A stretch of 64,000 bases of DNA. Origin: Blastocladiella emersonii ATCC 22665 (taxonomy: Eukaryota > Fungi > Blastocladiomycota). Positions within the stretch are counted from its first letter, which is position 1, and each line of letters begins with the position of its first letter. The notes beneath the pieces were generated by a model that was not told where the DNA came from, did not search any database, and was given only the letters and a program-made list of their open reading frames with translations. Positions 23,312-61,800 of this stretch are shown in pieces. The translations under genes and the position numbers were made by a program. The DNA is taken from NCBI GenBank assembly GCA_025594325.1, contig JANHCV010000002.1, positions 2,418,001 through 2,482,000 of the forward strand, read 5' to 3'.

Positions 23312-25266
23312 TCACATGCGTCGCCGGATCGTCGCGTTCGGATCCCCACTAATCCGGCGGCTGTTGGACCGCGTGCGCGCGACGCTGGGCCCGCCGTACG
23401 CGTCGTCCTTGACGAGCCCGAGTATCTCGCGCATCGACCGCAGCCAGCGCGTGTCGAGGACCAGGCACAGCAGCGGGTCGGTTGCCGAGTTGATGTAGAT
23501 CCCCAGCGCTGACGTGACGTGGAACCACGCGGGCAGCTCCCGGTCCGAGATGAACTGGTACGCCACGCTGACCATGTACGGCAGCCAGTTGATGCAGAAG
23601 GTGCCCGTGATGATGATCGCCTTGCGGAACAGCACCGTCTCGAGCTTCTTCTCCTCCATGGCGCGCCGGCGACGGAACTGCGGGAGCGAGCGCAGGAACG
23701 AGCTCGCCTTCTTGCGCATCGTGTCCTGCCCCGGCGGCACGCCCGCGCTCGGCAGCTGCCCGAGTCCCGACGTCACCGAGTCGTTGGGCGAGATGCTCGC
23801 GCGTCGTCCCGTCCCTACCGTGAGGGTGCGCGCGTGGTCAATCGGTGAACTCGGATCGTGTGTCGGAACACACGTACCCGACTTGGAGTGGTACTCGGGG
23901 CTCCCGCCGTCCGGCAACGCGCCAGACCCGCGCGGCGTCGTGGCCGCCGTCCGCGCGATCGTGCCCGCCGCCGCCGTACCACCGCCGACCGACGTGTCCT
24001 CCTGCCCGGTCCCGGACCCGTTGCCGACAACACTCGTCGACGCGTCCATGGACAGCGAGTGCGGCATCGTGAACGAGCTCGACGTCGGCAGCTCGTTGGC
24101 CGGCCCGAACACGGCGTTCCACCACGCCGGCCGCGTCAGCATCGGCGGCGTCGCCAGCGTCACGCTGAGCCGTTTCGCCGGCTGGCTCGGGTCCGCCAGG
24201 ATGCTCCCGCGCCGCCGCGGCGGGATCGGCGTCGTCGGCATGCTCGCTGGCGCGGGGAGGCCCGGCGACTCGGGTCCCTCGGCCATGCTCGACAGTGGCG
24301 GCCCGCCCGTGGCGCCCAGGCTCGCGCTCTTGGCCACGGCCATCCCGCCCGCGCCGCCGCCGTTCACGCTGCTATTGACGACGGTGCGGCCCGACTCGCC
24401 CAGCAGCGGCGAGTTGACGGACGACGACAGTGTGTTCATGGTGCTCGCCGCGGGCATGCTCATGCCCGGCGAGGTCGGCAGGCCGGGCGGCGGCATCACG
24501 CTCGACGGCGGCGCGTACGAGAACGACTCGGTGTTGTGCTGGCGCACGCTCTTGAGCAGCTTCTTGATCTCGACCACCTTGTGGTAGATGGCGTAGTAGC
24601 TGGTCGAGATGGTCACGGCTACGCTTGCGATCTGGAGAATCACAATGGCCGCGAACGTCGCCCACGCGGGGACCCGCGTCGTCCACTGCGACATGCAGTA
24701 CACGCGCGAGGGTTCCGGCCGGTACTCTTGCTGCAGCGCCCACGGGATCGCCGCGAGCCACCCGTTCCACAGCCACACGCCGGCGACCATGAACGCGACC
24801 TGCCGCGGGCGCAGCGGGGACTCCTTGACTGTCGCTGCGAAACGCTCGAACGCCATGACGCCCAGAGAGCTGAGCGAGACGCCGCCCTACACCTCGTTCA
24901 AGGTTAGCCTTGCGATCAACGACCGCGCCGCGTCGGGCAACGTACGAAGAACGTCGCCGACCAGCCCGAGTACTGGCACAGTCCGTACGACCACGCGCCG
25001 GTCGCGAGCAGCGTCGCGTTGACGCTGAGGTGCGTGACGGAAAGCGCGAGGTCGGCCACGGCCAGGTTCAGCACCAGGTAGTTGGGCACGTTGCGCAGGC
25101 CGCGGTCGTAGAAGAAGAGCACGATCAGGAACGTCGACCCAAGCACCGCCAGCGCGTTGATGACCACGACGATGGCGCTCCGCTCTACGAGCACCGGCTC
25201 TGTCCAGTCCACGGCGCTCGCCGGGATCATCCATGATGGCGTGGCTTCACTGTAGGGCCCGTTCAT
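23312..25266 (-). CDS. Class A (rhodopsin-like) 7TM GPCR with a very long third intracellular loop; join(25266..24946,24886..23312), about 631 aa
   Basis: TM2 YLVLNLAVADL, TM3 start GLCQ (disulfide Cys), AFERF (DRY-equivalent), ECL2 VYCM, TM6 FCINWLPY, TM7 INSATDPLL. 59-nt intron with GTACGT donor and CTAAC branch point. Confidence 0.85.
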
Positions 25267-26037
25267 CTTGTGGTAGGTCAAGAATGCATTGATGCGTTGT
25301 GCTAGTAGCGGGTGTACTCTCCCGGCATGAATCTCGCTCGCTCGCATCGCCGCTGCGTCACATGTGGACCGCGGCCTCCGTGGGGACGTGTAATTTGTGT
25401 CCGGATCCGCCGCCTGCGCCACACGCCGCGACGGCGAGATGAACAACGCGTCGACCGACTCCTGGCCGGACCCCAGCGTCGCGACCCGGAGGTGACGCGG
25501 GGCGCTGCCGAATCGAGCAGCGTGGATTCGGCTTCGGCTTCGGCTTCTGCTTCGTCGGCCATGGTCAGTCGTCTACTTGAGCAACACGAACACCGCTTCG
25601 CCGACCATGGTCAACAGCTCCGTCCTCGCTTCATGCCTGAGTCGACGGCCACGACCATCGACTTTCGAGGACGTGGAAAACAGGTGTTGCGCGCCAGCCG
25701 TCGAGATGTGGTCGAAGAAAGCGCCGCCCGCGCGAGCACGCCGCGACGACCTTCATTCATCATTCTTGAACATGGACACGACCATGGCCATCGACCAGAA
25801 CTGAGCGAACCACTCGCGACGAGACCAAGAGAGAGATAAGTGTGGCACTTAACCATGTTGAAAATATGACAGGTAGGGAAGAACAACAAACAGAGGAGGG
25901 GGAGGGGGAGAGGAGAGGGAGGAAAATGGGAACAGCGGGGACAAAAATCAAACCAGTGCAATTGATCGACCGCCGCCTTGATGAGGGTCAGCTGCGGCCG
26001 TGAGTGAAGGTGAGGGAGGGGAGGGAGGGGAGGGGGA

Positions 26038-29000
26038 TCATGCCATGCGGCGGCGGTAGTACATGACACCACCACCGATCGCGCCGACACCGGCGAGACC
26101 GCCAATGACACCGCCGACGATGGCGCCCGTGTTGGAGCCCGCGTCCGTGGTCGGCGTCGCCGTCGGCGTAGCCGTGCGCGTCGCGGTCGCGGTCGACGTG
26201 GCCGACGACGTGGTCGACGACGACGAGGACGGCGTGTCCTGGACGGCAAAGTCCGAGTACATGGGGCACGAGCACGTCACCGTGGTACCCGAGGCCGTGG
26301 TCGTGCAGCCCGAGTTGGACCACGCGGTACCCGACCAGTACACGCACTGCTGCGTGTTACCGGTGCTGGCCGGCGACACGTTGTCGACCTGGAACGTGAG
26401 CGACATGGACCGCCCGTCGAGCGCCGCCGTGGTGGACCCGCTCGTGTACACGTTCACGTTGAGCACCTGCGACAGGAGCTTCTTGCCGCCCGTCGACTGC
26501 GTCGCCCGCTGCTGGCGCCACTGGACCACGTGCGCGTCGTAGCACCCGGCCGTCACCGTGTTGGGCAGCGTCACCGTGTAGTTGCCGACGACACGCGGGT
26601 CGTCGCCCGACGACGAGCCCGTCGCGACGATGCGGCGCACCGAGCCCGTGAACGTGCCGAGGTCCGACGTCAGCGACTGCGTGGCGCCCGAGGCCGCGCA
26701 CGTGTCGCCAGCGACCGTACCGGCGAGGAGCGACGAGATCATGGACCGGACCGTGTTCTCGTCGGCCGTGGCGCGGCGGAACACGGGCGAGAAGCGGTTG
26801 ACGCTGAGGCTGCGGCGCTTGAGCGAGACCGTCGACGCGTCGAGCGCCAACTTGAGCAGCTGGTCCACGACGCCGAGCGCCTTCTTGGTCACCACGGGGT
26901 CGGCCGAGATGATGTTGCCGGCCGCGTCGCGCGAGCAGCCCGCCACGAGCGAGTTGACGAGGTTGAGCGTCGACGCCATCGTCGTAGCGTCAAACGACGA
27001 GAAGTCGACCGTCGCGAGCGCCGAGGCCGCGCGGACCACGAAGCCCGAGTCGACGACCGAGTTGGCCGCGCGGTCGAGCATGATCTGGTTGACCCAGCCC
27101 TGCGCCTGCGCCTGGTACGCCTTGAGCTGCGTGAGCTGCGCCGCCGTGAGCTGCGACGCCCACGCGCTGATCTGGATCGTGTCGAGGAAGCCCGTGATCT
27201 CGCGCAGCGCGGCATCAGCCGAGCTGACGAGCAGGGCCTGGATGCGGTTGACAAAGTTGCCGGCCTCGGCGATGAGCTGGTCACCGTTGAGCGACGGCTT
27301 GACCACCGTCACCGTGGCGTTGGCGCGGGCCGACGACCCGAGCGCGTCCGTGAGGATCACAAACGCCTTGGTCGCCGTGGCGGGGAACCGGACGCCGTCA
27401 ATGGTCGCGGGCGACTGCTGGAACGCGAAGATCGAGTCCTGCTCGCGCTTGGTCGCCGTATCGTTGGCCGAGTACCCGAACGTGTACGCGTACGGCGGGA
27501 CACCGCCCGACCAGCCCGTCGACGCCAGCGAGAACGAGTCGAGGTTGGCGCGGCCCGAGGCCGTGTCGGTCACCGTGAGCTGGTTGGCCGCGATGGCGTT
27601 GGCCACCGAGAGGACACCGCCCGTGGGGAGCGAGGCCGTCTGCAGCTGCACGTCCGAAATGTACGTCTGGCCGTTGACCGTCACCGTGCAGCGGAGCTTG
27701 TAGTTCTTGCCGGGGAGCAGGTCGCCGGGGCCGAACGAGTACGTCGAGCCCTTGGTCGAGCGCTTGAGGACGAGGTCCGTGTCGACCGAGTCGGGCGACA
27801 GCGACCACGCGTACGCCGAGGGCGACAGCGTTTTGTTGGTGGCCACGTCGACGACCGTGATCCAGAGCGTCGGGGCGCGGCCCGCCGAGACCTGCGCGTC
27901 AGCGGGGAAGCGCTGGCCGCGGACGCGGGGGACCGTGCCGGCGAGGGCGTTGAGCACCGTGAAGTCGGACGCGTAGCGGTCGCCGTTGGCGTTGTCGATC
28001 ACGTAGACACCGTAGTAGTACTTGGTGCCGGCCGCGAGCGTGCCCGAGGGGATCGTGTACGAGGCGCCGATGTTGGACACGACGATGCAGTTGGTGTAGC
28101 CCGCCGCGCACTTGAGCCAGCTGTACGTGTACGACTTGGTCGCGAAGGCCGCGTCGGGGTCGTTGATCGTCGCCGTCAGCGTGTTGGCCGCCGACGCGCC
28201 GCAGTCCTGCCAGTTGCCGCCGTCCACGTTGACGTTGAGCGGGGCCGCCGTGACCGAGAGCACCGACTCGGTGCGCACCTCGATGCTGTTGTACGTGACG
28301 ACGCAGTCGAGGTAGAAGGTGCCGTAGCCGAGGTTCTTGGGCTTGAACGAGATGCTCGACCGGTTGGCGCCCTTGGCCTCGAGGTTGGTGAAGCTGACCA
28401 GGTTGGCCGACGAGTCGTACAGCTCCCAGCGGTACGACAGCGTCACCTTGGTTATGTCGATGTTGGCGCACAACGGGAACTGCACCACGGCCTGCGCGTT
28501 GACCTGCCCGCCGAGCCGCACCGACTGCTTGGACGCCGTCTGGTACACGTTGGGGAACACCGTCGACACGCGCTGCACCGTGAACGCAGCGCTCGCGCCG
28601 TACGTGGTGCCGAACTTGGCGTAGCCCTCGTAGCCCGTGACGCGGATCTTGAAGTCCGTGCCCGTCACGACCCAGCTCGCGGGCACCTTGAAGTCGAGCT
28701 TCTTGCTGCCCGAGGGACCGAAGATACCGGCCACCTGCGCCGCCAGCGACGTGTCCGTGCCCTCGTACGTGACAAAGTAGGTCACGTCGTTGCCGCGCGA
28801 GCCCGAGAGGTCGAACCGGATGTCCGACGTGTCACACCCAATGACGCGCTTGGGCGCGTTGATGGCGATGACGGGGGCCGTCGGCGTGTACGTCGGCTGG
28901 CTCGTGGGCACCAAGATCGACTGGCCGGTTGTGAACGTCGGGATCGACGTCTTGGTGGACGAGCCGCCGCCCGAGCCGCCCGTCGTCGTCGTGGCGTGGT

Positions 29001-32000
29001 CCGTGGTCTTGGTCGTGCCGCTGGACGACGACGACGAGGAGGAGGAGGACGAGGATGAAGACGACGATGAGGAGCTCGAGGACGACGAGGACGAAGAGGA
29101 GGAGGAGCTCGACGACGACGACGAGCTCGAGGCGTGCGACGACGTAGACGAGGTCTGCGGAGCCGACGACGAGGTAGTCGCGGCGCGAGTCGTGGTAGTG
29201 GTCGTGGTGGTGGTCGAGGTCCCGGCCGAGGGCTGGGCCTGGACAGCAAAGTCGGCCGCGGACATGGGGCAGTTGCAGCTGATGTTGGAGCCCGACACCG
29301 TCTGGGTGCAGCCCTGGCTGGTCCACGCGTTGCCGTTGAAGTAGGCACACTTGTTGGTGAAGCCAGCGGGGGCGGCCGTGACGCCCGTCGCTGTGTACTT
29401 GACGCGGCGCGCCGACGACGCGGCAATGGGCGTGGACTGGCCCGACGGGAACACCTCGACGCCGAGCACGCTCTTGGACGTGATGCGGTTGGCCGCCACC
29501 GTGTTGCCCGACTTGGACTTCCACGACACGAGCTGCGTGTCGTAGCAGCCCTGCGGGATCGAGTCGGGGAGGACCACGTTCGAGAAGTCGCCGACGGTGC
29601 GCGCCGAGTCGCCCGACTTGGCGCCCGTCGCCACGATGCGGCGCGCGTTGCCCGTGAAGGCGCCGCCCGTCTTGGGCGCCACCGTCTGCGCCGAGCCCGT
29701 CGCCTTGCACGAGTCGGCCTTGACCGACGCCGCCATGAGCGAGCGCACCTGGGTCGTCAGCGTGTCCTTGTTGGCGGCCGCGCGCTTCTCGAGGTGCAGC
29801 ACCAGGTCCGACGTCTCGTCCGAGGGCGCGCGGCGGAGGAGCATCGCCGACTGGTCCGCCTGGTTGAGCAGCTGGCCAATCACCTCGGCCACCTTGTCGG
29901 CGACCGTGGGGTCCGCCGACACGTCCTTGCCGTCGCGCGACTTGGCGGCGCCCGTGATGGCCGAGTTCACGATCGCCAGGGCGCCGTCAATGGTCGCCTG
30001 GGACGCCGACGAGAAGTCGGCGTTGGCGAGCGCCGAGGCCGACTTGGCCGCGAACCCGGCGTCGACGCGCTTCGGGTTGGTGGCGAGCGTCGTGAGGAAG
30101 CCCTGGGCCTGGGCCTGGAGGGCGAGGAGCTGCGTCTTCTGGGCGTCGGTCGGGTTGGCCGACGACAGCACGTTGAGGTCAATGAGCGACGTGAGCGTCG
30201 AGAGCTGGATCATGGCCGTGTCGGGGCTCGACAGCAGCGACTGGATCTTGGTCGCGAGCGCCTGCGCCTGCGTGATGATGTTGGCCACGTTGATCGTGGG
30301 CGCCGTGATCGCCAGGTCCACCTCGGTGCGCTTCTCCGACCCGAGCGAGTCCGTGACAATGACAAACGCCTTCTTGGCCGTGGGCGGGAACAGGATGCCC
30401 GTGAGCGTCTGCGCCGACGACTGGTACGTGATGAAGTTGTCCTCGGACACGGCGGGCGTGACCGTGGGGTCGACCGACGTGTACCCGAACGTGTACACGT
30501 ACGGCTTCTTGCCGCCCGACCAGTCGGCCGCCGTCAGCTTGAACTTGTCCGTGTTGGCGAGGCCGCGCGCCGTGTTGGCGTTGGCGCCCGTCTCCTGGTT
30601 CTCGACCTTGAAGGTACCGCCCGACGGGATGCCGGCCACCTTGAACTGCACGTCGCCGAACGCCGTGAGGCCGGCGCTGGTCGTGATCGTGCACCGGAGC
30701 GTGTAGTCCTTGCCGGCCGTCAGCGAGTCGGGCGAGAACTCGTAGAAGTAGTCGCCGTCCTTGTCCGTGTCGATGGTGAGCGTGTCCTTGGACTTGGGCG
30801 ACACGGTCCACGCGATCTCGACGTCGTCCACGTCAATCTCCGTCGACGGGCTCGTCGAGTCGTCGAACACCTGCGCGAACAGCGTCACGCCGTCCTTGAC
30901 CGTGACCGAGTCCGTCGACGGGAACCGGCTCACGACGACGCGGGGCACCACGACGCTCGAGCCCTCGAGGAACACGTAGTCGGTCGAGTACCGCAGCGGG
31001 TTGGCCTTGTCCTGGACGAGGATCGCGCCGTACTTGGTGGTCCCGGCGGGGATCGAGCCGGCCGTGATCGTGTCCGAGTCGGTGCCGACTGCCTTGACCG
31101 TGCACACGTTGAAGTTGTAGTCATCGCATTCGAACCACGTCAGCTGGTAGTCGGACAGCGCCGGGTTGGCCGCGCGGTCGTCGTCGATGATCGTCACCGT
31201 CAAGGTGCGCGCAATCGACGTCGGGATCACCTGGTAGTTGCCGCCGTCAATGAACGCCGAAAGGAGCGAGCCCGAGACGCCGACGGGCAGGCTGGCCGTG
31301 ACCGTCTGGCCGTTGTACGTCGCCGACGCCGTGAGCGTAGTCACGCCGTAGCCAAACTGCTCGGCAGTCAGGAAGATGGACGCGGCCGTGTTCGAGTCGG
31401 CGCCGATGGTCGTCAGGTCGTTGACGACCTGGCCCGACGGCAGCGTGGCGCTCCACGCGATGGTCGTGGTGGCCGTGGTCGGGTCGACGCCCGTGCACGC
31501 GGCGAACGACAGGGCAAACGACGGGTTAAACTGGTCGCGCGGCGACACCTCGAACCCGGGCGTGTCAAAGTCAATGAAGGGCACGATCTGGCTCGACGAC
31601 TTGCGCGTGATGGTGATGGTCTTGGACGCAGAGTACTGGTTGGCGTACTCGTCGTACATGTCGGCGGCCGTGATGCGCAGCTGCAGCGGCGTGCCGAGGG
31701 GCACCCACGACTGCGGCACAATGAACTCAAAGTCCTTGAAGCCCGACGACGGGTACTGCGACGCAATGTTGCTGGCAATCGAGCCGTCCGACCCGAGGTA
31801 CTCGACGAAGAACGTCGGGTCGTTGGCCAGCGTGCCCGACAGGTCGTACTCGATGTCGTCCGTCTCGCAGTCGTTGATGAACATGGGCCCCGTCAGCACC
31901 ACGTACGGCGCCGAGTTGGTCTCCTGCGGCACCTCGTTGGCGACCGTCACCGTGGCCCCGACCGCGTACGACCGCGCCGTCAGCTGGGTCGTCGTAGCCG

Positions 32001-34989
32001 ACGCCGTGGTGGTAGTGGTGGTGGTCGTCGACGTGGCATCATCGGTAGACGTCGTCGACGTGGCCGCATCCGTGGTAGTGGTCGACGTGGCCGCATCGGT
32101 CGTCGTGGTCGACGTCGCCGCGTCCGTAGTCGTGGTCGTCGAGTCGGTTGTGGTCGTCGTGTCCGTAGTCGTCGCAGTATCGGTCGTCGTCGTGGTCGTG
32201 TCCGTGGTCGTGGTCGTGTCCGTGGTCGTGTCCGTCGTCGTGGTCGTGTCCGTGGTCGTGGACGTGTCCGTGGTCGTGTCCGTGGTCGTGTCCGTGGTCG
32301 TGGCCACCGACACCTCGTCGACGGCGCGGCGGTACACGAGGTGGAGGACCGTGGCCTGCTCGTGGGTGCGGAGGCCCTCGAAGTTGGACGACAGGTCAGC
32401 GAGGGCCGCGTCGCGGCGCGCCTCGACGCGCACCTTGGCGTCGCGCGACGAGGGCGTGCCGACCTGGGCGCCGTACGCCCACGCCATGGCCTCGGGGAGC
32501 ACCTGGACGCGGACGCCCGCCATGCGCGCGGCGCGGATCACGTCGTACGCGTCGAGCGCGGGCTTGGCGGCCGACTGGGCGCGGACCGCGGCAATGCCGT
32601 TGAGCTTGGCCATGGCCTCGTTCGAGACGAGGGGCAGGACGGCCGAGTCGACGGGCGAGGTGCGCTGGCGGAGCTTGAGCGCGTCGGTCGACGTCAGGTC
32701 TGTGTCAAAGTTGGGCAGGGCGTCGACGCCGAGGGCGAACGCGCCGGCCTCGGGGGCCGTGGCCGCGGCGCGCGCCAGGATCTTGGCGAGGTGAGCCTTG
32801 GGGACGACCGAAGACGGGATTGCGAGCACGAGCGAGCCCGTGGTGAGGCGGGACCCGGCCTCGAGCGCCTCCTCGACCGACGCGTCGGGGCGGTCGAGGA
32901 CCACAATCTGCCACGCGCGCGGGGTCCACTTGGCGTCGAGCCCGACGAGCTCGTCGTTGAGCTTCTCGGCCTCGACCGTGTTGGACGACGGCTTGACGGC
33001 GAGCACCACCTCGAGCCGGTGGTACTCGTTGAACTCGGCCTCGACCGCGTCGAGCGCCTTGGCGAGCACCGACCGCGGCACCTTGTCGGCGTCGTGCACG
33101 ATCACGAGCGAGATCATCTCAGCCGCCTGGCCGGCCTTGGCGGCGGCGCACGCGGGGGCCGCGCGCACCAGGTCGCCGAACACCTGCAGGTCCTGGACGC
33201 TGCGCTTCTTGATGGACGCCGAGGTCGCCGAGGGCGTGGTCACGCCCGTGCGGATCGTGCGGATCAGGGCAAACGAGAGCTCGTACGGGTCCTCGGTGTG
33301 GAACGTGGCGACGTCGGGCTTGAGCTGCTTGTCCTCGGTGAAGAGCGTCGCGGCCGCGTGCAGGATGACGGGCGTCTCCGACAGGACAATCTCGTGGAGC
33401 AGCGTCGAGTCGAACTCGGGCGACCCGATCACGGCGACGCGCGCCGCGGCCGGGTCCGTCAGGTACCCGACGACCTGCTTGGCGGCCAGCGCGGAACCGC
33501 GCACCTCGATGGCGAACTTGGTCCACGCCGACGCGCGCTGCTCAATGTACTTGATGGCGGGCACGCCGTTGACCTTGGTCTTGCCGTGGATCGGGCCCAT
33601 GAACGTGACGCGGAGCGTGGGCTCCTTGGTCGACCGGACAAAGTGCACGTTGTCGAGCGCGTCGCAGAACCCGATGAGCCCGCCGGCCGCCGACAGCTCG
33701 CCGAGGAACACGAGCTCGCGGACCGCGTGGCGCTTATCGGCAGCGCCGGCACCGGCGAACGGGTGGCGGAAGGTGCGGTAGAGGCCCGACGAGACCACGG
33801 GCAGGACGCGGACGGCGGCCGAGGGCTTGACGAGGTCGCGGTCCATGGTGGCGAGCTCCTCGGACGCGAACAGGAGCTCCTCGGCGAGCGCGATCGTCTT
33901 CTCGCGGAGGTGGTCCTCGGCGAGCGCCACGTCGTCCGTGAGCGGGGCCGACGTCTGCTCGGCGCTCTTGACGTCCTTGCCGAGCTTGGCGAGCGTGCCG
34001 CGGAGCGCCGCGTCGAGGCTCGGGCGCGAGACACCGACGACAATGTGCGAGGCCGAGCAGCGCGACCCGAGCGACTTGGCGGCCAGGTAGTCGTAGCCGG
34101 CGCCCGAGTTGGCGTCAAAGTAGACCAGGTCAAAGTCGGCGCGCGACAGGGCCTCGGCCACGGCCTTGGACCGGTCGAGCACCTCGGCGGCCGACGTCGG
34201 GCGGGCCGACGGCACCTTGCTGACCGTCACCGAGGCGCCGTGCAGGCGGTCGGCCGTGATGTCCTCGGAGGTGAACACGGTCACGTCGTGGCCCTGCTGC
34301 GCCACCTCGATGGCGGCCGCGAGACCAAAGTCGGTGGCCGAGGTCTGGAGCGAGTGCGCGTCGATGAACATGGCGACCTTGCCGGCGCGCTTGTCTGTGG
34401 GTCGTGGAAAGGTAGCTCGGGTGAGTGGATCTGCTCGGTGATCGAAGACCGAGGAGGAGAAGAGAGCGTACCAGTCGAGGAGGACGAAGCCGCGGCAACG
34501 ATATCCGCGTCGAGGTCGACGGCGAGCGAGCACGAGGGACCGGAGAAGCCAATGTCGCAGAAGCAGTGGCGGTTGATCATGATGCCGTTGCCGGAGCACT
34601 CACTGGCGGCGACGGGGACGGGGGCAGCGGGCCGTGGGGACGAGACGTCGACCTGCGGGGGTGGAGTGGCGAGGGCGGGGTGTCAGACGCAGAGTGGCGA
34701 GGGCGGGGTGTCAGACGCAGAGTGGCGAGGGCGGGGTGTCAGACGCAATGTCCTCGAGCGTGGGAAGCCGGGTAGTCCGTACCTTGGGCTGAGAAGAGGG
34801 AGAGTAGGACGAGAAGCCGGCGAAGATGAAGGCACCGGCGAGCAGCGGCAGGGCGAACCACGCGAGCATCTTGAGGCGCGAGGCCATGGCGTCGCGGCGG
34901 ACGACGTCGTTGTGGTTGTTGTTGACGCGGCTGTCGGGCAGCAGGGGCGCCTTGGCCGCGTCGGCACCGGCGGCACGAGCGGGGGCCAT
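26038..34989 (-). CDS. Giant (~2900 aa) membrane protein: signal anchor, EGF, GT-B-like, GT-A-like, Thr-rich stalk, REJ-GAIN/GPS, Ser-run, second REJ-GAIN/GPS, TM; join(34989..34783,34652..34472,34394..26038)
   Basis: Exon 1 has a hydrophobic segment LAWFALPLLAGAFIFAGF. Exon 2 has EGF-like CSGNGIMINRHCFCDIGFSGPSC. GT4-like QGHDVTVF, ELVFLGEL...FCDALD and E-x7-E; GT2-like ISLVIVH...LEVVLAV. Two GPS motifs: CAYFNGNAWTSQGC...CNCPMSAADFAV and CVYWSGTAWSNSGC...CSCPMYSDFAV. C-terminal TM GAIVGGVIGGLAGVGAIGGGVMYYRRR. Confidence 0.85.
31985..32305 (-). repeat. Coding Thr/Asp-rich (TTTD)n mucin-like repeat
   Basis: Repeated accacggacacg units encoding TTTDTTTDTTTDTSTTTD... between the GT-like and REJ regions. 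Confidence 0.85.
34664..34747. repeat. Three perfect 28-bp tandem copies (GAGTGGCGAGGGCGGGGTGTCAGACGCA) inside intron 1 of the giant gene
   Basis: Units at 34664-34691, 34692-34719 and 34720-34747; each contains a CTGAC branch-point-like motif on the minus strand. Confidence 0.95.
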
Positions 34990-36256
34990 GGTGGCGGCGG
35001 GTGATGCTCAGGCGAGCAGCAGCAGCGGCGGCAGCACTTGGCGACGAGCGGGTGACGCGGTCGTGGAGGCGGTCTAATCGGTCGTGAGAGCAGGCAATCA
35101 GATGAGTGATCCGATCGAGCGTGTAGACGGCGGCGCGGTGGCGGGAGAGGGTCGACGGCCGTGTGCACGGGCCGATCACGGCGTGGGTGGGAGGTCGGAG
35201 GCGAGCGTCACGTACAGAGAGCGGTGAGAGCGAGCACAGCAGCGTCCGCGGCGAGCGCACACGAGAGAGGGACGAGGGAGTCGCTCGACCGGCGAGGAGC
35301 GTCGCGCGGGAGCGGGTCGGTCTGTCGGTCGTGCGTGCGAGCGAGCGAGCGGGCGGGCGTGTGCGAGCGGGATCGAGAGGAGCGCGAGGCGGGCGGGTGT
35401 GCGGGCGCGCGTCCGGAGCAGGCAGGCGGGCGAGGCGAGCGTTCTCGGAGGAGCAGAGGGGAGAGAGGGGATGCGGGACGCGCGGGCGGCTTTTAGCGGC
35501 GGCGGGGACGCGTCTCTCTCCCCCTCGCAGCGTGCCGAGCCGAGCCGAGCACGGCCGAGGCGCGCCGTGATGTGGGAACGCGCGCGGGTGCGAGAAGGGT
35601 GGCGAAGGGTGTGAGAACGGGCCTCTCCGCGCCGCGATCGCCGCGGCCGCGCACCGCGCGAAAAAGCGCGTCTCCCGCCGTGGCGCCGACGCGCGACGCG
35701 TGGGACCCGCCGTCACCTGACGCGCACGCGACCGCCTCCGCGGCCGTCTCGCACCGTCTCGCACCGCCCCGCCCCCCTCTGCCGCCATTTCCGCCCCCCT
35801 TCTGCCGCCTCGCCCGCGTCGCCCGAGACTGGCGTCCCACGCATCGCATCGTGCCTGTTCTGCTCCGCGCCGCGTGTGCGCGGACGCGGCCGGAAACTGC
35901 GCGCCGCCCGGCGGGTTCCCACGATCGCGCCCGGCGGTCAGCATGCATACGCGCCGACTCGCATCCCGATCACCATCTGTGCGCTTCTCGCTGCCTTCTC
36001 GTGGCCTTTGCTGCCGACCCGGCCGCGCCCGAACTGTCTCCCCTGCCGAGGCGTGTCGCCCACCTCCACGTGGATTCGACTCGTTGCTTGATTTTCATCT
36101 GCCGTGGCGGTGGCGCCGCACTCTGCTCCGCTGCCCTGTCCGCTGCCTCGGCTGCCGTCCCTCGCCAGAGCTGTTTGCCTCCCCTCTCTCCCCCGCTCTG
36201 CACTGCTCGAACCACGGGCCACACCCACCACATGCAGCAGTAACCGCAGCGCAACC

Positions 36257-37183
36257 ATGTCATCCGGCCCCTCGTCCGTCTCGTTCGCCTCGGCGCTAAG
36301 CACGCTGTTCCGCGCCGTCCCGCGCGACCTGGCCGACCTGTCGCGCGCCCAGTCGCTCGCCCTCGCCGCCTTTGCCGCCGTGTCCGTGTGCTTCTCGATC
36401 ATCGACATCAACGCGCTGCTGTTCCCGTCGCGCGAGCTCGCCCTGCTCAAGTGGACCAACGACGCCGCCGCCGGCCGCGAGGTGTGGCAGCGCGCCCTCA
36501 TGACGCTGTCGGGCGTGGCCAGCGTCACGGGGTGCCTGTCCGTCGTCCTGGCCGCGCTGGGCCGCTACTCGACCTACTTCTGGGGCACCATCAATGCCGT
36601 GTGCTACGGGCTCGCCGCCTTTGCCTACGGCTACGTCGGCGACGGCCAGCTCAACGCCTACTTTGTCGTGATGCAGGTCGTCGGCATGCTGGCCTGGGCC
36701 CGCAACATCGACAACGCCGACACGGCCACCGCCCGGTCGCTGTCGTGGCTCGCGCGCGGCGCCGTGGTCGCGGCGTGCACCGCCTTTGGCTGCGTCATGT
36801 ACTTTGAGATCCCGTGGGTCGCCACCGCCCTGACGGGCGCCTACGCGTACGACGGCGTCCTGGCCCCGCACGTCCTCGACAGCGCCGCCGTGGCGACCCA
36901 GGTCCTCGCCCAGGTCCTCATGACGGGGCGGTTCTGGGAGCAGTGGATCCTGTGGATCGCCGCCGACGTGATCCAGATCGTCATGTTCTCGGGCCTCGTC
37001 AGCGTCAACGCCTTCGACTTCAACATCCTCATCATGTGGTCCCTGTTCCTCATCAACGCACTCTACGGCGCCACCACCTGGTACCGCCGCGCCCAGGTGC
37101 CGGATGCCGAGCGACCCGAGTCGAGCGCCGCGACGCTCGTGCCGTCGGCCGACGCCGCTGATGCCGCCGCGGCCAAGGTCTAG
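36257..37183 (+). CDS. pnuC: PnuC-family nicotinamide riboside (vitamin) transporter
   Basis: SGVASVTGCLSVVLAALGRYSTYFWGTINAVCY, GQLNAYFVVMQVVGMLAW, LDSAAV...AQVLMTGRFWEQWILWIAADVIQI, FLINALYG..W. About 8 TM segments, intronless. Confidence 0.85.
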   Translation: MSSGPSSVSFASALSTLFRAVPRDLADLSRAQSLALAAFAAVSVCFSIIDINALLFPSRELALLKWTNDAAAGREVWQRALMTLSGVASVTGCLSVVLAALGRYSTYFWGTINAVCYGLAAFAYGYVGDGQLNAYFVVMQVVGMLAWARNIDNADTATARSLSWLARGAVVAACTAFGCVMYFEIPWVATALTGAYAYDGVLAPHVLDSAAVATQVLAQVLMTGRFWEQWILWIAADVIQIVMFSGLVSVNAFDFNILIMWSLFLINALYGATTWYRRAQVPDAERPESSAATLVPSADAADAAAAKV

Positions 37184-58869: not shown

Positions 58870-61800
58870 TTAGGCTGCCATGCGGCGGCGACGCCAGTAG
58901 AGGGCGCCGCCCGCGAGCGCGCCGACGCCGGCCACACCGCCAATGACGCCACCGGCGATCGCGCCCGTGCTGTCGGCCTTGGCGGCGGTGCCCGTCGCCG
59001 TCGGGGACGCGGTCGCGGTATCCGTGGCGGTACTGGACCGCGACGACGTGGACGACGAGGAGGTCGCCGTGGCCGTGGACCGGACCGCGAAGGTGCCGAA
59101 CGGCGGGCACGAGCACGTCACGCCCGTCGAGGTGACCGTGGTCGAGCACGAGTCGGCGACCCACGCGGACCCGTTGTACTCGACGCACTGGAGCCCGGTA
59201 CCCGTGAGCGGCTTGGTGTACGCGTACGGGACGCGGGCCGAGGCGCCGGCGCTGGTGCGGAGCGAGCCCGAGACGGACGCGCCGCGCTGGTCGTACGCGT
59301 CGACGGCGAGGACCGGCGACACGATCTTGTTGCTGGCGACGTTGGACCCGTACGCCTGCTTCCACTGCACCGCCACCGTGTCGTAGCACCCGGCGCGGAG
59401 GTTCTGCGGCAGCGTGAACGAGAAGTCGCCCGCGGTGCGCGCGCTGTCGCCCGACTTGGTGCCCGTGGTCGCGATCCGGCGCGCCGACGCCTTGAAGTTG
59501 CCCGTCTTGGAGTTGATCGTCTGCGCGGCGCCCGACGCCTTGCAGTTGTCGCCGGCAATCGTCGACTGCATGAGCTTGGTCACCGACGACCGCACCGACG
59601 CCTCGGTCACCACGGCGCGGCGGACGAGCGGCGACAGGGACACGTCACGGCGCGCGAGCAGCGACGTGGCCCCCGCGTTGGCCGACTTGACGAGCGCATC
59701 GAGCACGTCGCCCGTGCGGTCCGCAATCTTGCGGTCCGCTGACACGACCGCGTTGCCGCGGCCGACGTTGGCCGCCGAGATGATCGAGTCGACGAGCGAC
59801 GCCGCCTGCGACAGCATGTCGGGCGACGCCACGCCGTAGTCGACGCCCGAGAGCATCGACGACGACCGCGCCGCGAACCCGGCGTCGAGCCCGCGCCCGC
59901 TCGTGGCGATCTGGTTGAGCCAGTTCTGCGCCGCCGTCTGGTACGCGAGGATCTGGTTGCGCTGCGCGTCCGTGGCCGAGGCGGGGATCTGGTCGAGGTC
60001 GACCTGGTCGAGGAGCGACGAGATGAGCTGCATGGCCGTGTTGGGGCTGGACGCGATGATGGGCACAATCTTGTTCTTGAGCGCCTCGGCCTGCGCGAGA
60101 ATGTCCGAGGCCGACAGCGTGGGCACCGTGAGCGTGACCGTCTTCTTGATCGTGACCTCCGAGCCCGCCGCGTCCGTGAGGATCACGAACACGGACGTGG
60201 TGCCCGCGGGGAGCAGGACACCGTCCATGGACGTGGCCGTGTCGAGGTACGACAGGTACGTGTCGTCGTCGGTGCCGTCCGCGCTGCGCTGCGTGAACCC
60301 GAACGCGTACTGGTACGGCGTCTTGCCGCCCGTCCACCCGGTCGTTGCGAACCGGAACGGGTGGATGAACGCCTGGCCCGTGCCGTCGACCGCGTTGGTC
60401 TTCTGGTTCACCACCTTGAGGGCGCCGCCCGTGGGCGGCGTCGTGGTCTTGAACTGCACGTCCGAGAAGGTGGTGGCGGCGCCGAGCGTGATCGTGCACC
60501 GGAGCGTGATGTCGGCGCCGGCGGGGAGCACGTTCGAGTCGAAGAAGATGCCGTTATAGTCGGGGTCGTCGATCTTGATCTTGTCGGCCGTGGTCGCCGA
60601 GCGCGGCGACACGGACCACAGGTACGTGTCGGCGTACGTCTCCTCGCCCGTGGTGCCGTCGTACACCGTGGCCCACAGCTGCAGCGACTGCGCCGCCGAG
60701 AAGGCCGAGTCCGAGGGGTCGCGCTCGAGCTTGAGCTTGGGGATCACCGCGTTGACCGAGTCGACAAACACGTAGTCGCCCGTGATGCGCGACGGCGTGG
60801 CAATGTCCTGGATGAGCACGCCGAACATGCCCTGGGTGCCGCCGGGGAACAGCGCCGCGATGTTGAACGACTTGGTCAGCGTCGACTCGTCCGAGGTCCC
60901 GACGACGACACACCCAGTCAGGTCGGCGGCGCACTTGGCGAACGTGAACCGGTAGTTCTGCGCAATCTTGGTCGGCTCGTACACGTTGACCGTCATGGCG
61001 AGGTTCGGGCCGGCCGACACCTGCTGGTAGTTGCCGCCGTCGAACCCGGCCGAGAGCTCGGGCGGGTACACGTCGATCACGGCCGTGCCGACGCCCGTGG
61101 CGCCGTCGTACGTGACCTCGGTGCGCAGGTAGTAGCGGCCGTAGGGGAGGTATGTGGTCGGGAACGAGAGCAGCGGGTCCGTCGTCGAGCCCGTGTACTT
61201 GACCTTGTTGTCGGTCCACGCGATCTGCTGGCGGTTCGCGTCGAGCAGCTTCCACGCGTACGTGAGCGTGGCCTTGGTCAGGTCGACCGCCGCGCACTCG
61301 GGGAACTGCACGTCGACCTGCGCGTCGATGCCGTCCACGGGGAAAATGTCGTTGCGCGGGTTGGCCGGCGACACGATGGGCACGACGCCCGCGGCGCGCG
61401 ACGTGGTCCACGTCATGGACGCCGCGTACTGGCGCTGGTACGTCTCGACGCCCTCGACCGCCGTGATGCGCACCACGAACGGCGCCTCCGTCTTGATCCA
61501 CGTCCCGGGCACCGTGAACACCGTGTCGAACAGCGGGTCCGCGGGCACGCCGGCCGCAAACTGGGCCGCGACCTCCGAGTCGGTGCCGAGGTACTCGAAG
61601 AAGAACGACACGTTGTCGCCCGTCGTCGCCGACAGGTCGAACGTCACGTCGTTGGTGTCGCAGTTGGAGATGGACTCGGGGCCCGACACGGCAATGCCGG
61701 GCGCCGTGGGCGTGGGCACGGCCTCGGGGTCGGGCGTCGGGATCACAAAGGGCTGGCCGCTCGTGAACGACATGACCGTCGACGTGGACGTGGTGGCCGT

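What the first reader, a model, noticed from the sequence alone, without database searches (positions are those of the whole stretch)
26038..34989. Candidate new receptor family: pseudo-glycosyltransferase domains fused to polycystin-like REJ-GAIN modules, anchored at both ends
Seen: a ~2900-aa protein ordered as N-terminal signal anchor, EGF, GT-B-like, GT-A-like, mucin stalk, REJ-like, helical region plus GPS, poly-Ser, a second REJ-GAIN, then TM with a 5-residue tail. Established: GAIN/GPS defines adhesion GPCRs and PKD1-family proteins, and REJ-GAIN is the polycystin-1 ectodomain arrangement; tandem GT4+GT2 proteins are typical of bacteria. Inference: I know of no description of this fusion. 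It could be a surface glycan or cell-wall sensor, or a mechanosensitive adhesin, that uses dead GT folds as lectins. With no 7TM or channel region, it would need a partner to signal.
Basis: partly seen in the sequence, partly recalled or inferred. Interest (0 to 1): 0.9.

Follow-up and report, generated by a model that had tools for sequence, protein, structure and literature searches.

The report
Fungal surface protein: sugar-enzyme head on polycystin stalk
A water mould-like fungus (Blastocladiomycota) encodes a real 2,914-residue membrane protein that joins a probably inactive bacterial-type double glycosyltransferase "head" to two copies of the REJ-GAIN stalk known from polycystin-1 and the sea-urchin sperm receptor for egg jelly; this domain combination has not been described, occurs only in this fungal group, and most likely acts as a sugar-recognising surface receptor or adhesin.

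Summary
One three-exon gene on the minus strand (34989-26038) encodes 2,914 aa, the same length as the public annotation. Its order is: hydrophobic N-terminal segment, 4-Cys EGF-like motif, GT-B (GT4-like), GT-A (GT2-like), Thr/Asp stalk, REJ-GAIN, a 37-Ser run, a second REJ-GAIN, a Gly-zipper TM and the tail RRRMA. REJ-GAIN is firmly established: Pfam GPS passes its cut-off, the AlphaFold model has pLDDT 90, the best structural matches are PKD1L1, sea-urchin REJ1 and PKDREJ, and solved GAIN domains match at Z 13-15. The GT head has weaker but consistent support. The canonical catalytic motifs are missing (no DXD family-wide, the Arg/Lys phosphate motif replaced, the first Glu of EX7E not conserved), and so is the GPS cleavage triad HL|T. 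Full-length relatives with the same architecture exist only in Blastocladiomycota (Allomyces, Sorochytrium, and fragments in Catenaria and Blastocladiella). UniProt names them only "GAIN-B domain-containing protein", and I found no paper on them. The closest known design is sea-urchin SpREJ1 (EGF, lectin domains, REJ, GPS, one TM). I read it as a glycan-recognising surface receptor or adhesin that needs a membrane partner. That function is inferred, not shown. It is a new variant of a known kind. The scan had already noted two paralogs of this family in the same genome.

The parts
34783..34989 (-). Exon 1 (69 aa): 38-residue N-terminal stretch, then a hydrophobic segment (aa 39-61, window 34807-34875) that is either a signal anchor or a signal peptide
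   Evidence: ATG in a good context and GT donor; hydrophobicity peak; segment conserved in Allomyces and Sorochytrium orthologs
34653..34782 (-). Intron 1 (130 nt, GT..AG); contains a perfect 28-bp x 3 tandem repeat at 34664-34747
34472..34652 (-). Exon 2 (181 nt); carries the 4-Cys EGF-like motif CSGNGIMINRHCFCDIGFSGPSC at 34530-34598
   Evidence: Frame and splice sites; four Cys and three Gly invariant in orthologs; Pfam EGF_Teneurin/EGF_2 below threshold in P0004 and P0008
34395..34471 (-). Intron 2 (77 nt, phase 1)
33190..34392 (-). GT-B (GT4-like) part of the head, about aa 131-530; the Gly loop and the Arg/Lys phosphate motif are replaced, and E-x7-E is kept here but not across the family
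   Evidence: Pfam Glyco_transf_4 / Glyco_trans_4_2, E 2.4e-5 and 8e-5, just under cut-off; Foldseek and VIA-align matches to SenB, PimA, BshA and MshA at Z 10-12 on a low-confidence model; profile match to the SenB C-terminal domain across EX7E
32479..33114 (-). GT-A (GT2-like) part of the head, about aa 557-768; DXD is replaced by P-S-S and the 'DD' by V-K
   Evidence: Pfam GT2 at E 0.012 in one of the three A2 members, unnamed in the output; above cut-off in paralog P0005 and in 3 of 7 members; profile matches to solved GT2 enzymes 5hea and 3bcv at E 1e-3, with the DXD column aligned to 'kss'
31984..32304 (-). Thr/Asp-rich mucin-like stalk
   Evidence: Translation; DNA tandem repeats
30298..31911 (-). 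REJ-like region of module 1 (all-beta)
   Evidence: 36% identity to module 2; orthologous regions hit Pfam REJ at 53-77 bits
29233..30297 (-). GAIN domain of module 1 (helical subdomain plus beta subdomain with the GPS CAYFNGNAW...CNCPMSAADFAV); internal and far from the membrane
   Evidence: Pfam GPS matches this module at E up to 10; aligned with the modelled module 2; motif scan
28879..29232 (-). Ser/Thr linker, including 37 consecutive Ser (29020-29130)
27295..28878 (-). REJ-like region of module 2
   Evidence: AlphaFold model at pLDDT ~90; Foldseek matches to PKD1L1 (E 1e-31), sea-urchin REJ1 (E 2e-29, TM 0.61) and PKDREJ; 62 of 81 remote hits of the module profile are Pfam REJ
26233..27294 (-). 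GAIN domain of module 2; GPS CVYWSGTAW...CSCPMYSDFAV at 26233-26346, without the HL|T triad
   Evidence: Pfam GPS 28.8 bits against a 22.5 cut-off; VIA-align Z 13-15 to the solved GAIN domains of CD97, GPR56, BAI3, GPR110 and latrophilin-3
26056..26127 (-). C-terminal transmembrane helix with the Gly-zipper GAIVGGVIGGLAGVGAIGGGV
   Evidence: Hydrophobicity; 'GAIxGGxxGG' shared by family members
26038..26055 (-). Five-residue cytoplasmic tail RRRMA plus the stop codon
58873..63999 (-). Paralog 2 of the same family: GT head, stalk, one REJ-GAIN module, TM. Its N-terminus is cut off by the window end
   Evidence: BLASTP against the main protein, E 9e-155; alignments A2-A4

Best explanation
Shown. 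This is one real gene. It encodes a very large, mostly extracytoplasmic membrane glycoprotein of a family found only in Blastocladiomycota. A globular head (EGF-like motif, then a GT-B/GT4-like and a GT-A/GT2-like domain) sits on a low-complexity, probably O-glycosylated stalk. Below it are one or, as here, two REJ-GAIN modules homologous to the ectodomain of polycystin-1 / REJ proteins. The protein ends in a Gly-zipper TM helix and a tail too short and too variable to signal.

Inferred. The GT domains have lost the residues that bind the metal and the diphosphate of a nucleotide-sugar donor, yet they are conserved as well as the rest of the protein (40% vs 35-37% identity between paralogs). 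They therefore most likely act as a non-catalytic binding module for a glycan or sugar nucleotide. That is the same role as the C-type lectin domains at the equivalent position in sea-urchin SpREJ1, which binds a sulfated fucan. The GAIN domains lack the HL|T triad, so they probably stay uncleaved and serve as rigid or force-bearing stalk elements rather than tethered-agonist switches. Any signal would have to pass through a partner met in the membrane via the conserved Gly-zipper TM.

The likely setting is the wall-less zoospore or gamete surface, or the cell-wall interface: adhesion or recognition of a polysaccharide.
For: Single gene: a 3-exon model gives 2,914 aa, equal to the annotation length. 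The same head-stalk-REJ-GAIN-TM order occurs in single gene models of Allomyces macrogynus, A. javanicus and Sorochytrium.

REJ-GAIN.

GT head.

Motif loss: DXD is absent in all 7 aligned members, GRxxxKG is replaced by G[ED]L, and the first Glu of EX7E varies.

No HL[TS] in any Blastocladiomycota member, whereas 21 remote hits keep it.

Extracytoplasmic location: an N-terminal hydrophobic segment plus a C-terminal TM only, and two Cys invariant in the GT head.

Conserved TM with non-conserved tails of 5-30 aa.

Precedent: SpREJ1 has EGF, carbohydrate-recognition domains, REJ, GPS and 1 TM, and binds the egg-jelly fucose sulfate polymer (PMC1934368).
Against: - No expression, localisation, binding or activity data exist; no RNA run was listed.
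- The GT head model is poor (pLDDT 44), and the motif calls rest on weak profile alignments (E about 1e-3 to 1e-2) plus alignment by eye.
- The window protein itself keeps an E-x7-E pair, and most relatives keep one Asp of the GT2 'DD' motif, so residual or unusual catalysis is not excluded.
- Some uncleaved GAIN domains still signal in animals, and some non-canonical sites still cleave.
- No partner has been identified. The adjacent rhodopsin-type GPCR gene is not a conserved neighbour.
Confidence: 0.45

Rival explanations
1. Structural coat or adhesion mucin only. The protein is a passive component of the zoospore or cell-surface glycocalyx. The REJ-GAIN modules and low-complexity stalks act as spacers and the GT-like head as a bulky or adhesive cap, with no signalling and no partner.
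For: The tail has 5 residues here and is not conserved in relatives. The stalk composition varies freely between paralogs: Thr/Asp here, His/Asn/Tyr in P0001, Trp/Tyr repeats in P0011. The C-terminus looks like sialomucins (Podoplanin and MGC-24 below threshold). The GPS has no cleavage triad.
Against: The Gly-zipper TM is conserved across genera while the tails are not, which suggests a specific contact in the membrane. The head is conserved at 24-40% identity across genera, more than a mere cap would need.
Confidence: 0.25
2. Active, membrane-tethered bifunctional glycosyltransferase. The GT-B and GT-A domains work in the secretory pathway or at the surface. They would glycosylate the protein's own Ser/Thr stalks, as bacterial GT4 plus GT2 enzymes do for serine-rich repeat adhesins, or build a coat or wall polysaccharide. 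REJ-GAIN would then be a scaffold.
For: GT4/GT2 family signals. Atlas scores of 0.95-0.97 to bacterial fused GT1/GT4+GT2 enzymes. The window protein retains E-x7-E, and most relatives retain one Asp of the GT2 'DD'. The protein has extreme Ser/Thr tracts in cis. Luminal GT-B+GT-A polymerases anchored by an N-terminal segment exist in animals (EXT1/2; my own knowledge).
Against: DXD is absent in all seven members. The Arg/Lys diphosphate motif is replaced by acidic or neutral residues. The first Glu of EX7E is not conserved. The Gly loop is missing. A. javanicus P0008 appears to lack half of the GT-B domain. No detectable sequence relative exists among 5.8 billion proteins or in prokaryotic genomes, which indicates a highly diverged head.
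Confidence: 0.2
3. Annotation artefact: two or more neighbouring genes (a GT gene and a REJ-GAIN gene) are read as one because high G+C gives long open frames.
For: The genome is about 68% G+C, and even the antisense strand has a 1,956-aa ORF. No RNA evidence could be obtained. A Sorochytrium relative is annotated as two adjacent genes.
Against: Homology to relatives runs along the whole 8.4-kb exon in one frame. The same fusion is found in three genera and in at least two paralogs in this window. The GT part has the only N-terminal targeting segment and the REJ part the only C-terminal TM, so neither half would be a complete secretory protein without the other.
Confidence: 0.03

Closest known systems
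Sea-urchin sperm receptor for egg jelly 1 (SpREJ1/suREJ1, Q26627)
   Same: It has the same overall design: a single-pass surface glycoprotein with an EGF module, sugar-recognising head domains, a REJ region, a GPS and one C-terminal TM with a short tail. It is one of the two best structural matches of the module, and the one that covers most of it (E 1.8e-29, TM 0.61 over model residues 43-889). Architecture and ligand are from PMC1934368.
   Different: The SpREJ1 head consists of C-type lectin domains, not GT folds. It has one REJ-GPS module, not two, and no mucin-like spacers of this size. It is an animal protein, and sequence identity to the window module is only about 11%.
Polycystin-1 family (PKD1, PKD1L1-3, PKDREJ)
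   Same: The REJ region followed by GAIN/GPS is homologous. The module profile retrieves true PKD1-type proteins (P0077: PKD, REJ, GPS, PLAT, PKD_channel). PKD1L1, PKD1L2 and PKDREJ are top structural matches.
   Different: The window protein has no PLAT domain, no 11-TM or channel-like region, no PKD repeats recognised in its own sequence, and no HL|T cleavage triad. It carries two REJ-GAIN modules.
Adhesion GPCR GAIN domains (CD97, GPR56, BAI3, latrophilin)
   Same: The GAIN fold has helical subdomain A and beta subdomain B, and the GPS has four Cys and two Trp. Matches to solved structures reach Z 13-15, and Pfam GPS passes its cut-off.
   Different: There is no 7TM. The cleavage residues are absent (P-M-Y-S instead of N-H-L-T). 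Module 1 is about 1,000 residues from the membrane, and module 2 is separated from the TM by a ~40-residue Ser/Thr linker.
Bacterial fused GT4(GT1-Pfam)+GT2 glycosyltransferases of 600-750 aa
   Same: They have the same two-domain order and size. Language-model similarity is 0.95-0.97 with more than 209 shared features. Pfam GT4 N-terminal and GT2 signals appear in family members. GT-B structural matches reach Z 10-12.
   Different: No sequence relative is detectable. The canonical catalytic motifs are missing. The location is extracytoplasmic, and the domains are fused to an EGF motif and a REJ-GAIN stalk.
Fungal cell-wall stress sensors (Wsc1/Mid2 type)
   Same: Both are single-pass proteins with a Ser/Thr-rich extended stalk and a sugar-binding-type head at the tip. 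This comparison rests on my own knowledge.
   Different: There is no WSC domain, no Pfam Mid2/SKG6 match, and no cytoplasmic tail able to bind a GEF. The protein is ten times larger.

Membership tests
GAIN/GPS domain (adhesion-GPCR / PKD1 type) | GPS motif: four Cys and two Trp in the C-x2-W...W-x3-GC...C-x-C pattern | tested here: met
   Pfam PF01825 scores 28.8 bits against a 22.5 cut-off on module 2 and matches all modules at E up to 10. The motif is listed for every family member.
GAIN/GPS domain (adhesion-GPCR / PKD1 type) | GAIN fold: helical subdomain A plus beta-sandwich subdomain B that encloses the last strand | tested here: met
   The AlphaFold model has pLDDT 89.9, with helices at 538-727 and strands at 740-889. 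VIA-align gives Z 13.5-14.9 to solved CD97, GPR56, BAI3 and GPR110 GAIN domains.
GAIN/GPS domain (adhesion-GPCR / PKD1 type) | Autoproteolysis triad H-L-|-T/S before the last strand | tested here: not met
   The sites read CPMY-SDFAV, CPMSAADFAV and CPPFGTFAV. There is no His at -2 in any Blastocladiomycota member, whereas 21 remote hits keep HL[TS].
GAIN/GPS domain (adhesion-GPCR / PKD1 type) | Position directly before the first TM helix | tested here: not met
   Module 1 is internal. Module 2 is followed by about 40 Ser/Thr-rich residues before the TM.
Polycystin-1 (PKD1) family | REJ domain (PF02010) | tested here: met
   Pfam does not hit the window sequence directly. It does hit the orthologous regions of P0004, P0008 and P0002 at 77, 57 and 53 bits against a cut-off of 25. 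62 of 81 remote profile hits are REJ. The best structural matches are PKD1L1, suREJ1 and PKDREJ.
Polycystin-1 (PKD1) family | PLAT/LH2 domain after TM1 and an 11-TM, channel-like C-terminal part | tested here: not met
   There are only two hydrophobic segments, and five residues follow the last one. No PLAT or PKD_channel match was found.
Adhesion GPCR | Secretin-type 7TM domain after the GAIN | tested here: not met
   There is no 7tm_2 match and a single C-terminal TM. The neighbouring GPCR is a separate rhodopsin-type gene.
SpREJ1-type single-pass REJ receptor | EGF plus C-type lectin head, REJ, GPS, one TM | tested here: inconclusive
   The EGF-like motif, REJ, GPS and single TM are present. 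There is no C-type lectin domain; GT-like domains take its place. The design is the same, but orthology is not shown.
GT4 (GT-B fold, retaining glycosyltransferases) | Two Rossmann-like domains (GT-B fold) | tested here: inconclusive
   The model has only pLDDT 44. Even so, Foldseek's top hits are nearly all GT-B (probability 1.0). VIA-align gives Z 10-12 and aligns the C-terminal domain to SenB at 3.2 A over 147 residues. The Pfam GT4 N-terminal domain scores 24.9 bits against a cut-off of 28.5.
GT4 (GT-B fold, retaining glycosyltransferases) | Donor-binding residues: Gly loop, GRxxxKG, EX7E | tested here: not met
   The family has G[ED]L in place of GR. The first Glu of EX7E reads E/D/Q/A/Q/G across members. 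The window protein alone keeps E-x7-E. The alignment is partly by eye.
GT2 (GT-A fold, inverting glycosyltransferases) | Pfam PF00535 match | tested here: inconclusive
   Best GT2 E among the three A2 members is 0.012; the window's own table lists no GT2 hit. Paralog P0005 scores 30.7 bits against a cut-off of 23.3, and 3 of 7 members match. A family profile finds 5hea and 3bcv at E 1e-3.
GT2 (GT-A fold, inverting glycosyltransferases) | DXD metal-binding motif | tested here: not met
   The column aligned to D-S-D of 5hea and 3bcv reads P-S-S, P-S-T, R-V-S, P-P-R, Q-S-S, L-P-H and K-V-S in the seven members.

The most novel reading that the evidence does not exclude
A fungal lineage has built a glycan receptor by capturing a bacterial-type GT4-GT2 enzyme pair, disabling its catalysis, and mounting it as a lectin-like head on a polycystin/REJ-type REJ-GAIN stalk. 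The protein would work with a still unknown membrane partner, through its Gly-zipper TM, in zoospore or gamete recognition. This would be an independent, fungal counterpart of the sea-urchin egg-jelly receptor, and the first case of pseudo-glycosyltransferases used as the ligand-binding domain of a surface receptor.
Probability: 0.2. Interest if true: 0.8.

Novelty: new variant of a known kind. Interest (0 to 1): 0.55.

Why it matters
REJ-GAIN modules are studied almost only in animals, in polycystic kidney disease, sperm-egg recognition and adhesion GPCRs. Here they occur in a fungal lineage, without a channel or 7TM, duplicated in tandem, without the cleavage site, and joined to a head made of glycosyltransferase folds.

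If the head binds glycans, this would show a new way to build a carbohydrate receptor. It would also give a simple, non-animal system, in wall-less swimming zoospores, for asking what an uncleaved REJ-GAIN stalk does mechanically. In addition, it documents that the REJ-GAIN ectodomain is older and more modular than the PKD1/aGPCR context suggests.

Tried and rejected
- **Word-indexed protein searches.** Three were run. The whole protein found only one Sorochytrium protein, because the low-complexity tracts swamped the candidate list. The GT region found nothing, either within the long protein or as a 3-sequence alignment.
- **Prokaryotic genome scans for the GT head.** Both found no confirmed relative, so a bacterial donor cannot be named.
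- **Metagenome scan with the REJ-GAIN alignment.** It returned one short fragment of no use.
- **First structure job.** The GT head modelled with 3 sequences gave pLDDT 44 and was used only as weak support.
- **phmmer of the GT-B C-terminal half against PDB.** Nothing was found.
- **RNA evidence.** No RNA run was listed, and only DNA runs of the source sample appeared.
- **Literature searches** for the fusion, or for REJ or polycystin in Blastocladiomycota: nothing relevant.
- **Rejected ideas.**
  - The downstream rhodopsin-type GPCR is not the missing 7TM of this protein. It is a separate gene with its own N-terminus, and it is not a neighbour of paralog 2 or of the Sorochytrium ortholog.
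  - Tandem or internal GAIN is not unique: other proteins carry two GPS motifs.
  - A Mid2/SKG6-type TM domain is not present: no Pfam match.
Full report
**1. Is it there?**

Yes. On the minus strand an ATG at 34989 opens exon 1 (to 34783). A 130-nt GT..AG intron follows, then exon 2 (34652-34472), a 77-nt intron and exon 3 (34394-26038). The spliced CDS is 8,745 nt, or 2,914 aa, with no internal stop. The public record of this contig (GCA_025594325.1, JANHCV010000002.1) carries a gene with a 2,914-residue product ending at the same base, with no Pfam family on record.

A hydrophobicity scan finds only two membrane-type segments, aa 39-61 and aa 2885-2907. The region is about 68% G+C. Long ORFs alone therefore mean little here; even the antisense strand has a 1,956-aa ORF. 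What carries the argument is homology along the whole frame.

**2. The REJ-GAIN modules**

The C-terminal two thirds consist of two ~900-aa modules that are 36% identical over 907 residues (E 2e-163). Scanned alone, module 2 passes the Pfam GPS cut-off (28.8 against 22.5 bits), and every module scanned matches GPS at E up to 10.

A profile of four modules was searched against 1.84 billion representative proteins and gave 147 hits. Of 81 remote hits, 62 are Pfam REJ, 17 GPS and 34 K319L-like PKD. They include a true PKD1-type channel protein and adhesion GPCRs. Orthologous regions in Allomyces and Catenaria hit Pfam REJ at 53-77 bits against a cut-off of 25.

With a 142-row alignment, AlphaFold2 modelled module 2 at pLDDT 89.9 and pTM 0.87. 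The model has an all-beta region (1-535), a helical bundle (538-727) and a beta sandwich ending in the GPS (740-889).

- Foldseek against Swiss-Prot models ranks PKD1L1 (E 1e-31), sea-urchin sperm receptor for egg jelly (E 1.8e-29, TM 0.61 over residues 43-889), PKD1L2 and PKDREJ first, then ADGRF5.
- VIA-align against solved structures ranks the GAIN domains of CD97, GPR56, BAI3, GPR110, Gpr126, CELSR1 and latrophilin-3 first, at Z 11.8-14.9.

REJ-GAIN is therefore established.

The GPS lacks the H-L-|-T/S triad in both modules and in every Blastocladiomycota relative (CPMYSDFAV and similar). Among the remote hits, 21 keep it.

**3. The head**

Directly on the window sequence, Pfam gives only near-threshold GT4 N-terminal matches (24.9 against 28.5 bits; 23.2 against 23.4); the best GT2 E among the three A2 members is 0.012. 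Across seven family members, GT4 matches four (best E 4.9e-6). GT2 matches three, one of them above the cut-off (30.7 against 23.3 bits).

A family profile finds solved GT2 enzymes (5hea, 3bcv) at E ~1e-3. It finds the C-terminal Rossmann domain of GT-B enzymes (SenB/TIGR04348) at E 0.015.

The language-model atlas places the head next to bacterial fused GT1/GT4+GT2 enzymes of 600-750 aa, with scores of 0.95-0.97.

The only structure job I could give it used 3 sequences and was poor (pLDDT 44). Even so, Foldseek's top matches are nearly all GT-B enzymes. VIA-align gives Z 10-12 and aligns the C-terminal domain to SenB at 3.2 A over 147 residues.

I accept GT-B plus GT-A as the best reading. 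It is less certain than REJ-GAIN.

Motifs:
- The DXD column of GT2 is non-acidic in all seven members.
- The 'DD' motif is V-K in the window protein.
- The GRxxxKG of GT4 reads G[ED]L.
- The first Glu of EX7E is not conserved, although this particular protein keeps E-x7-E.
- Two Cys are invariant in the head, which fits an extracytoplasmic, disulfide-bonded domain.

The 4-Cys EGF-like motif in exon 2 is conserved in orthologs and is below threshold for Teneurin-type EGF.

**4. Distribution**

Close relatives come only from Blastocladiomycota: Allomyces macrogynus (AMAG_15133, UniProt A0A0L0T5Y1), A. javanicus, three loci in Sorochytrium milnesiophthora, Catenaria anguillulae and Blastocladiella britannica. 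Two metagenome fragments also match.

A local search with the head profile shows that the GT head is present in P0001, P0004, P0005, P0008 and P0011, and in none of the other 142 REJ/GPS hits. The window holds a second paralog with one module (58873-63999). Earlier scan notes mention a third paralog 258 kb away (not checked here).

The stalk between head and REJ is always low-complexity, but its composition differs. The TM 'GAIxGGxxGG' is conserved, while the tails (5-30 aa) are not. No large atlas cluster has the combined architecture.

UniProt's automatic name is 'GAIN-B domain-containing protein'. I found no paper on the family. A recent survey states only that GAIN predates Holozoa, and that holomycotan adhesion-type GPCRs have short N-termini (PMC12716839).

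**5. What it most likely does**

The nearest known design is SpREJ1. [quoted passage not shown]

By analogy, and from the motif losses, I read the GT pair as a non-catalytic sugar-binding head. I read the REJ-GAIN modules as uncleaved stalk elements, and the Gly-zipper TM as the contact to a partner. All of this is inference. Rivals are a purely structural coat mucin, an active tethered glycosyltransferase that might glycosylate its own Ser/Thr tracts, and (unlikely) a fused annotation.

**6. Open points**

- Whether the N-terminal segment is cleaved.
- Transcript evidence: no RNA run was listed.
- The origin of the head: no detectable bacterial or other relative by sequence.

**7. Verdict**

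This is a lineage-specific new variant of the REJ-GAIN surface-protein kind, not a categorically new system. It is moderately interesting, and more so if the pseudo-enzyme head proves to be a lectin.

Noticed in passing
window 23312-25446 (-): A rhodopsin-family 7TM receptor gene (Pfam 7tm_1 on two ORF pieces, with a long third loop) lies 0.6 kb downstream of the giant gene on the same strand. It is not a neighbour of paralog 2 or of the Sorochytrium ortholog, so it is probably unrelated.
   Followed up: partly
window 58873-63999 (-): A second family member has the GT head, a stalk, a single REJ-GAIN module, a TM and the tail RRRRMAA. Its N-terminus runs off the window end.
   Followed up: yes
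window 34664-34747: A perfect 28-bp x 3 tandem repeat lies inside intron 1 of the giant gene.
   Followed up: no
window 36257-37183 (+): An intronless PnuC/NMN-transporter-like gene (PF04973 on record). I used its exact product to identify the source assembly.
   Followed up: partly
P0011 + P0006 (Sorochytrium RI367_006413/006414): These adjacent gene models look like one split family member. It would have a GT head, a ~1,400-aa Trp/Tyr-rich 'TQWxSY' repeat stalk and the first part of REJ, then the rest of REJ plus GAIN.
   Followed up: partly
P0008 (Allomyces javanicus), alignment A4 columns ~310-420: This ortholog lacks the C-terminal Rossmann half of the GT-B domain. This is either a gene-model gap or a real deletion.
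   Followed up: no
window 26056-26127 and homologs: The Gly-zipper TM motif GAIxGGxxGG is conserved across genera and in two metagenome fragments, next to non-conserved tails.
   Followed up: partly
window 29134-35004 (+): A 1,956-aa antisense ORF opposite the gene is Arg/Gly-rich. It is a by-product of high G+C, not a gene.
   Followed up: no
ranks 6, 9, 11: Axonemal doublet-microtubule proteins from bovine sperm, Leishmania and Chlamydomonas match the GAIN part of the model at Z 12-13. What these chains are was not looked up.
   Followed up: no
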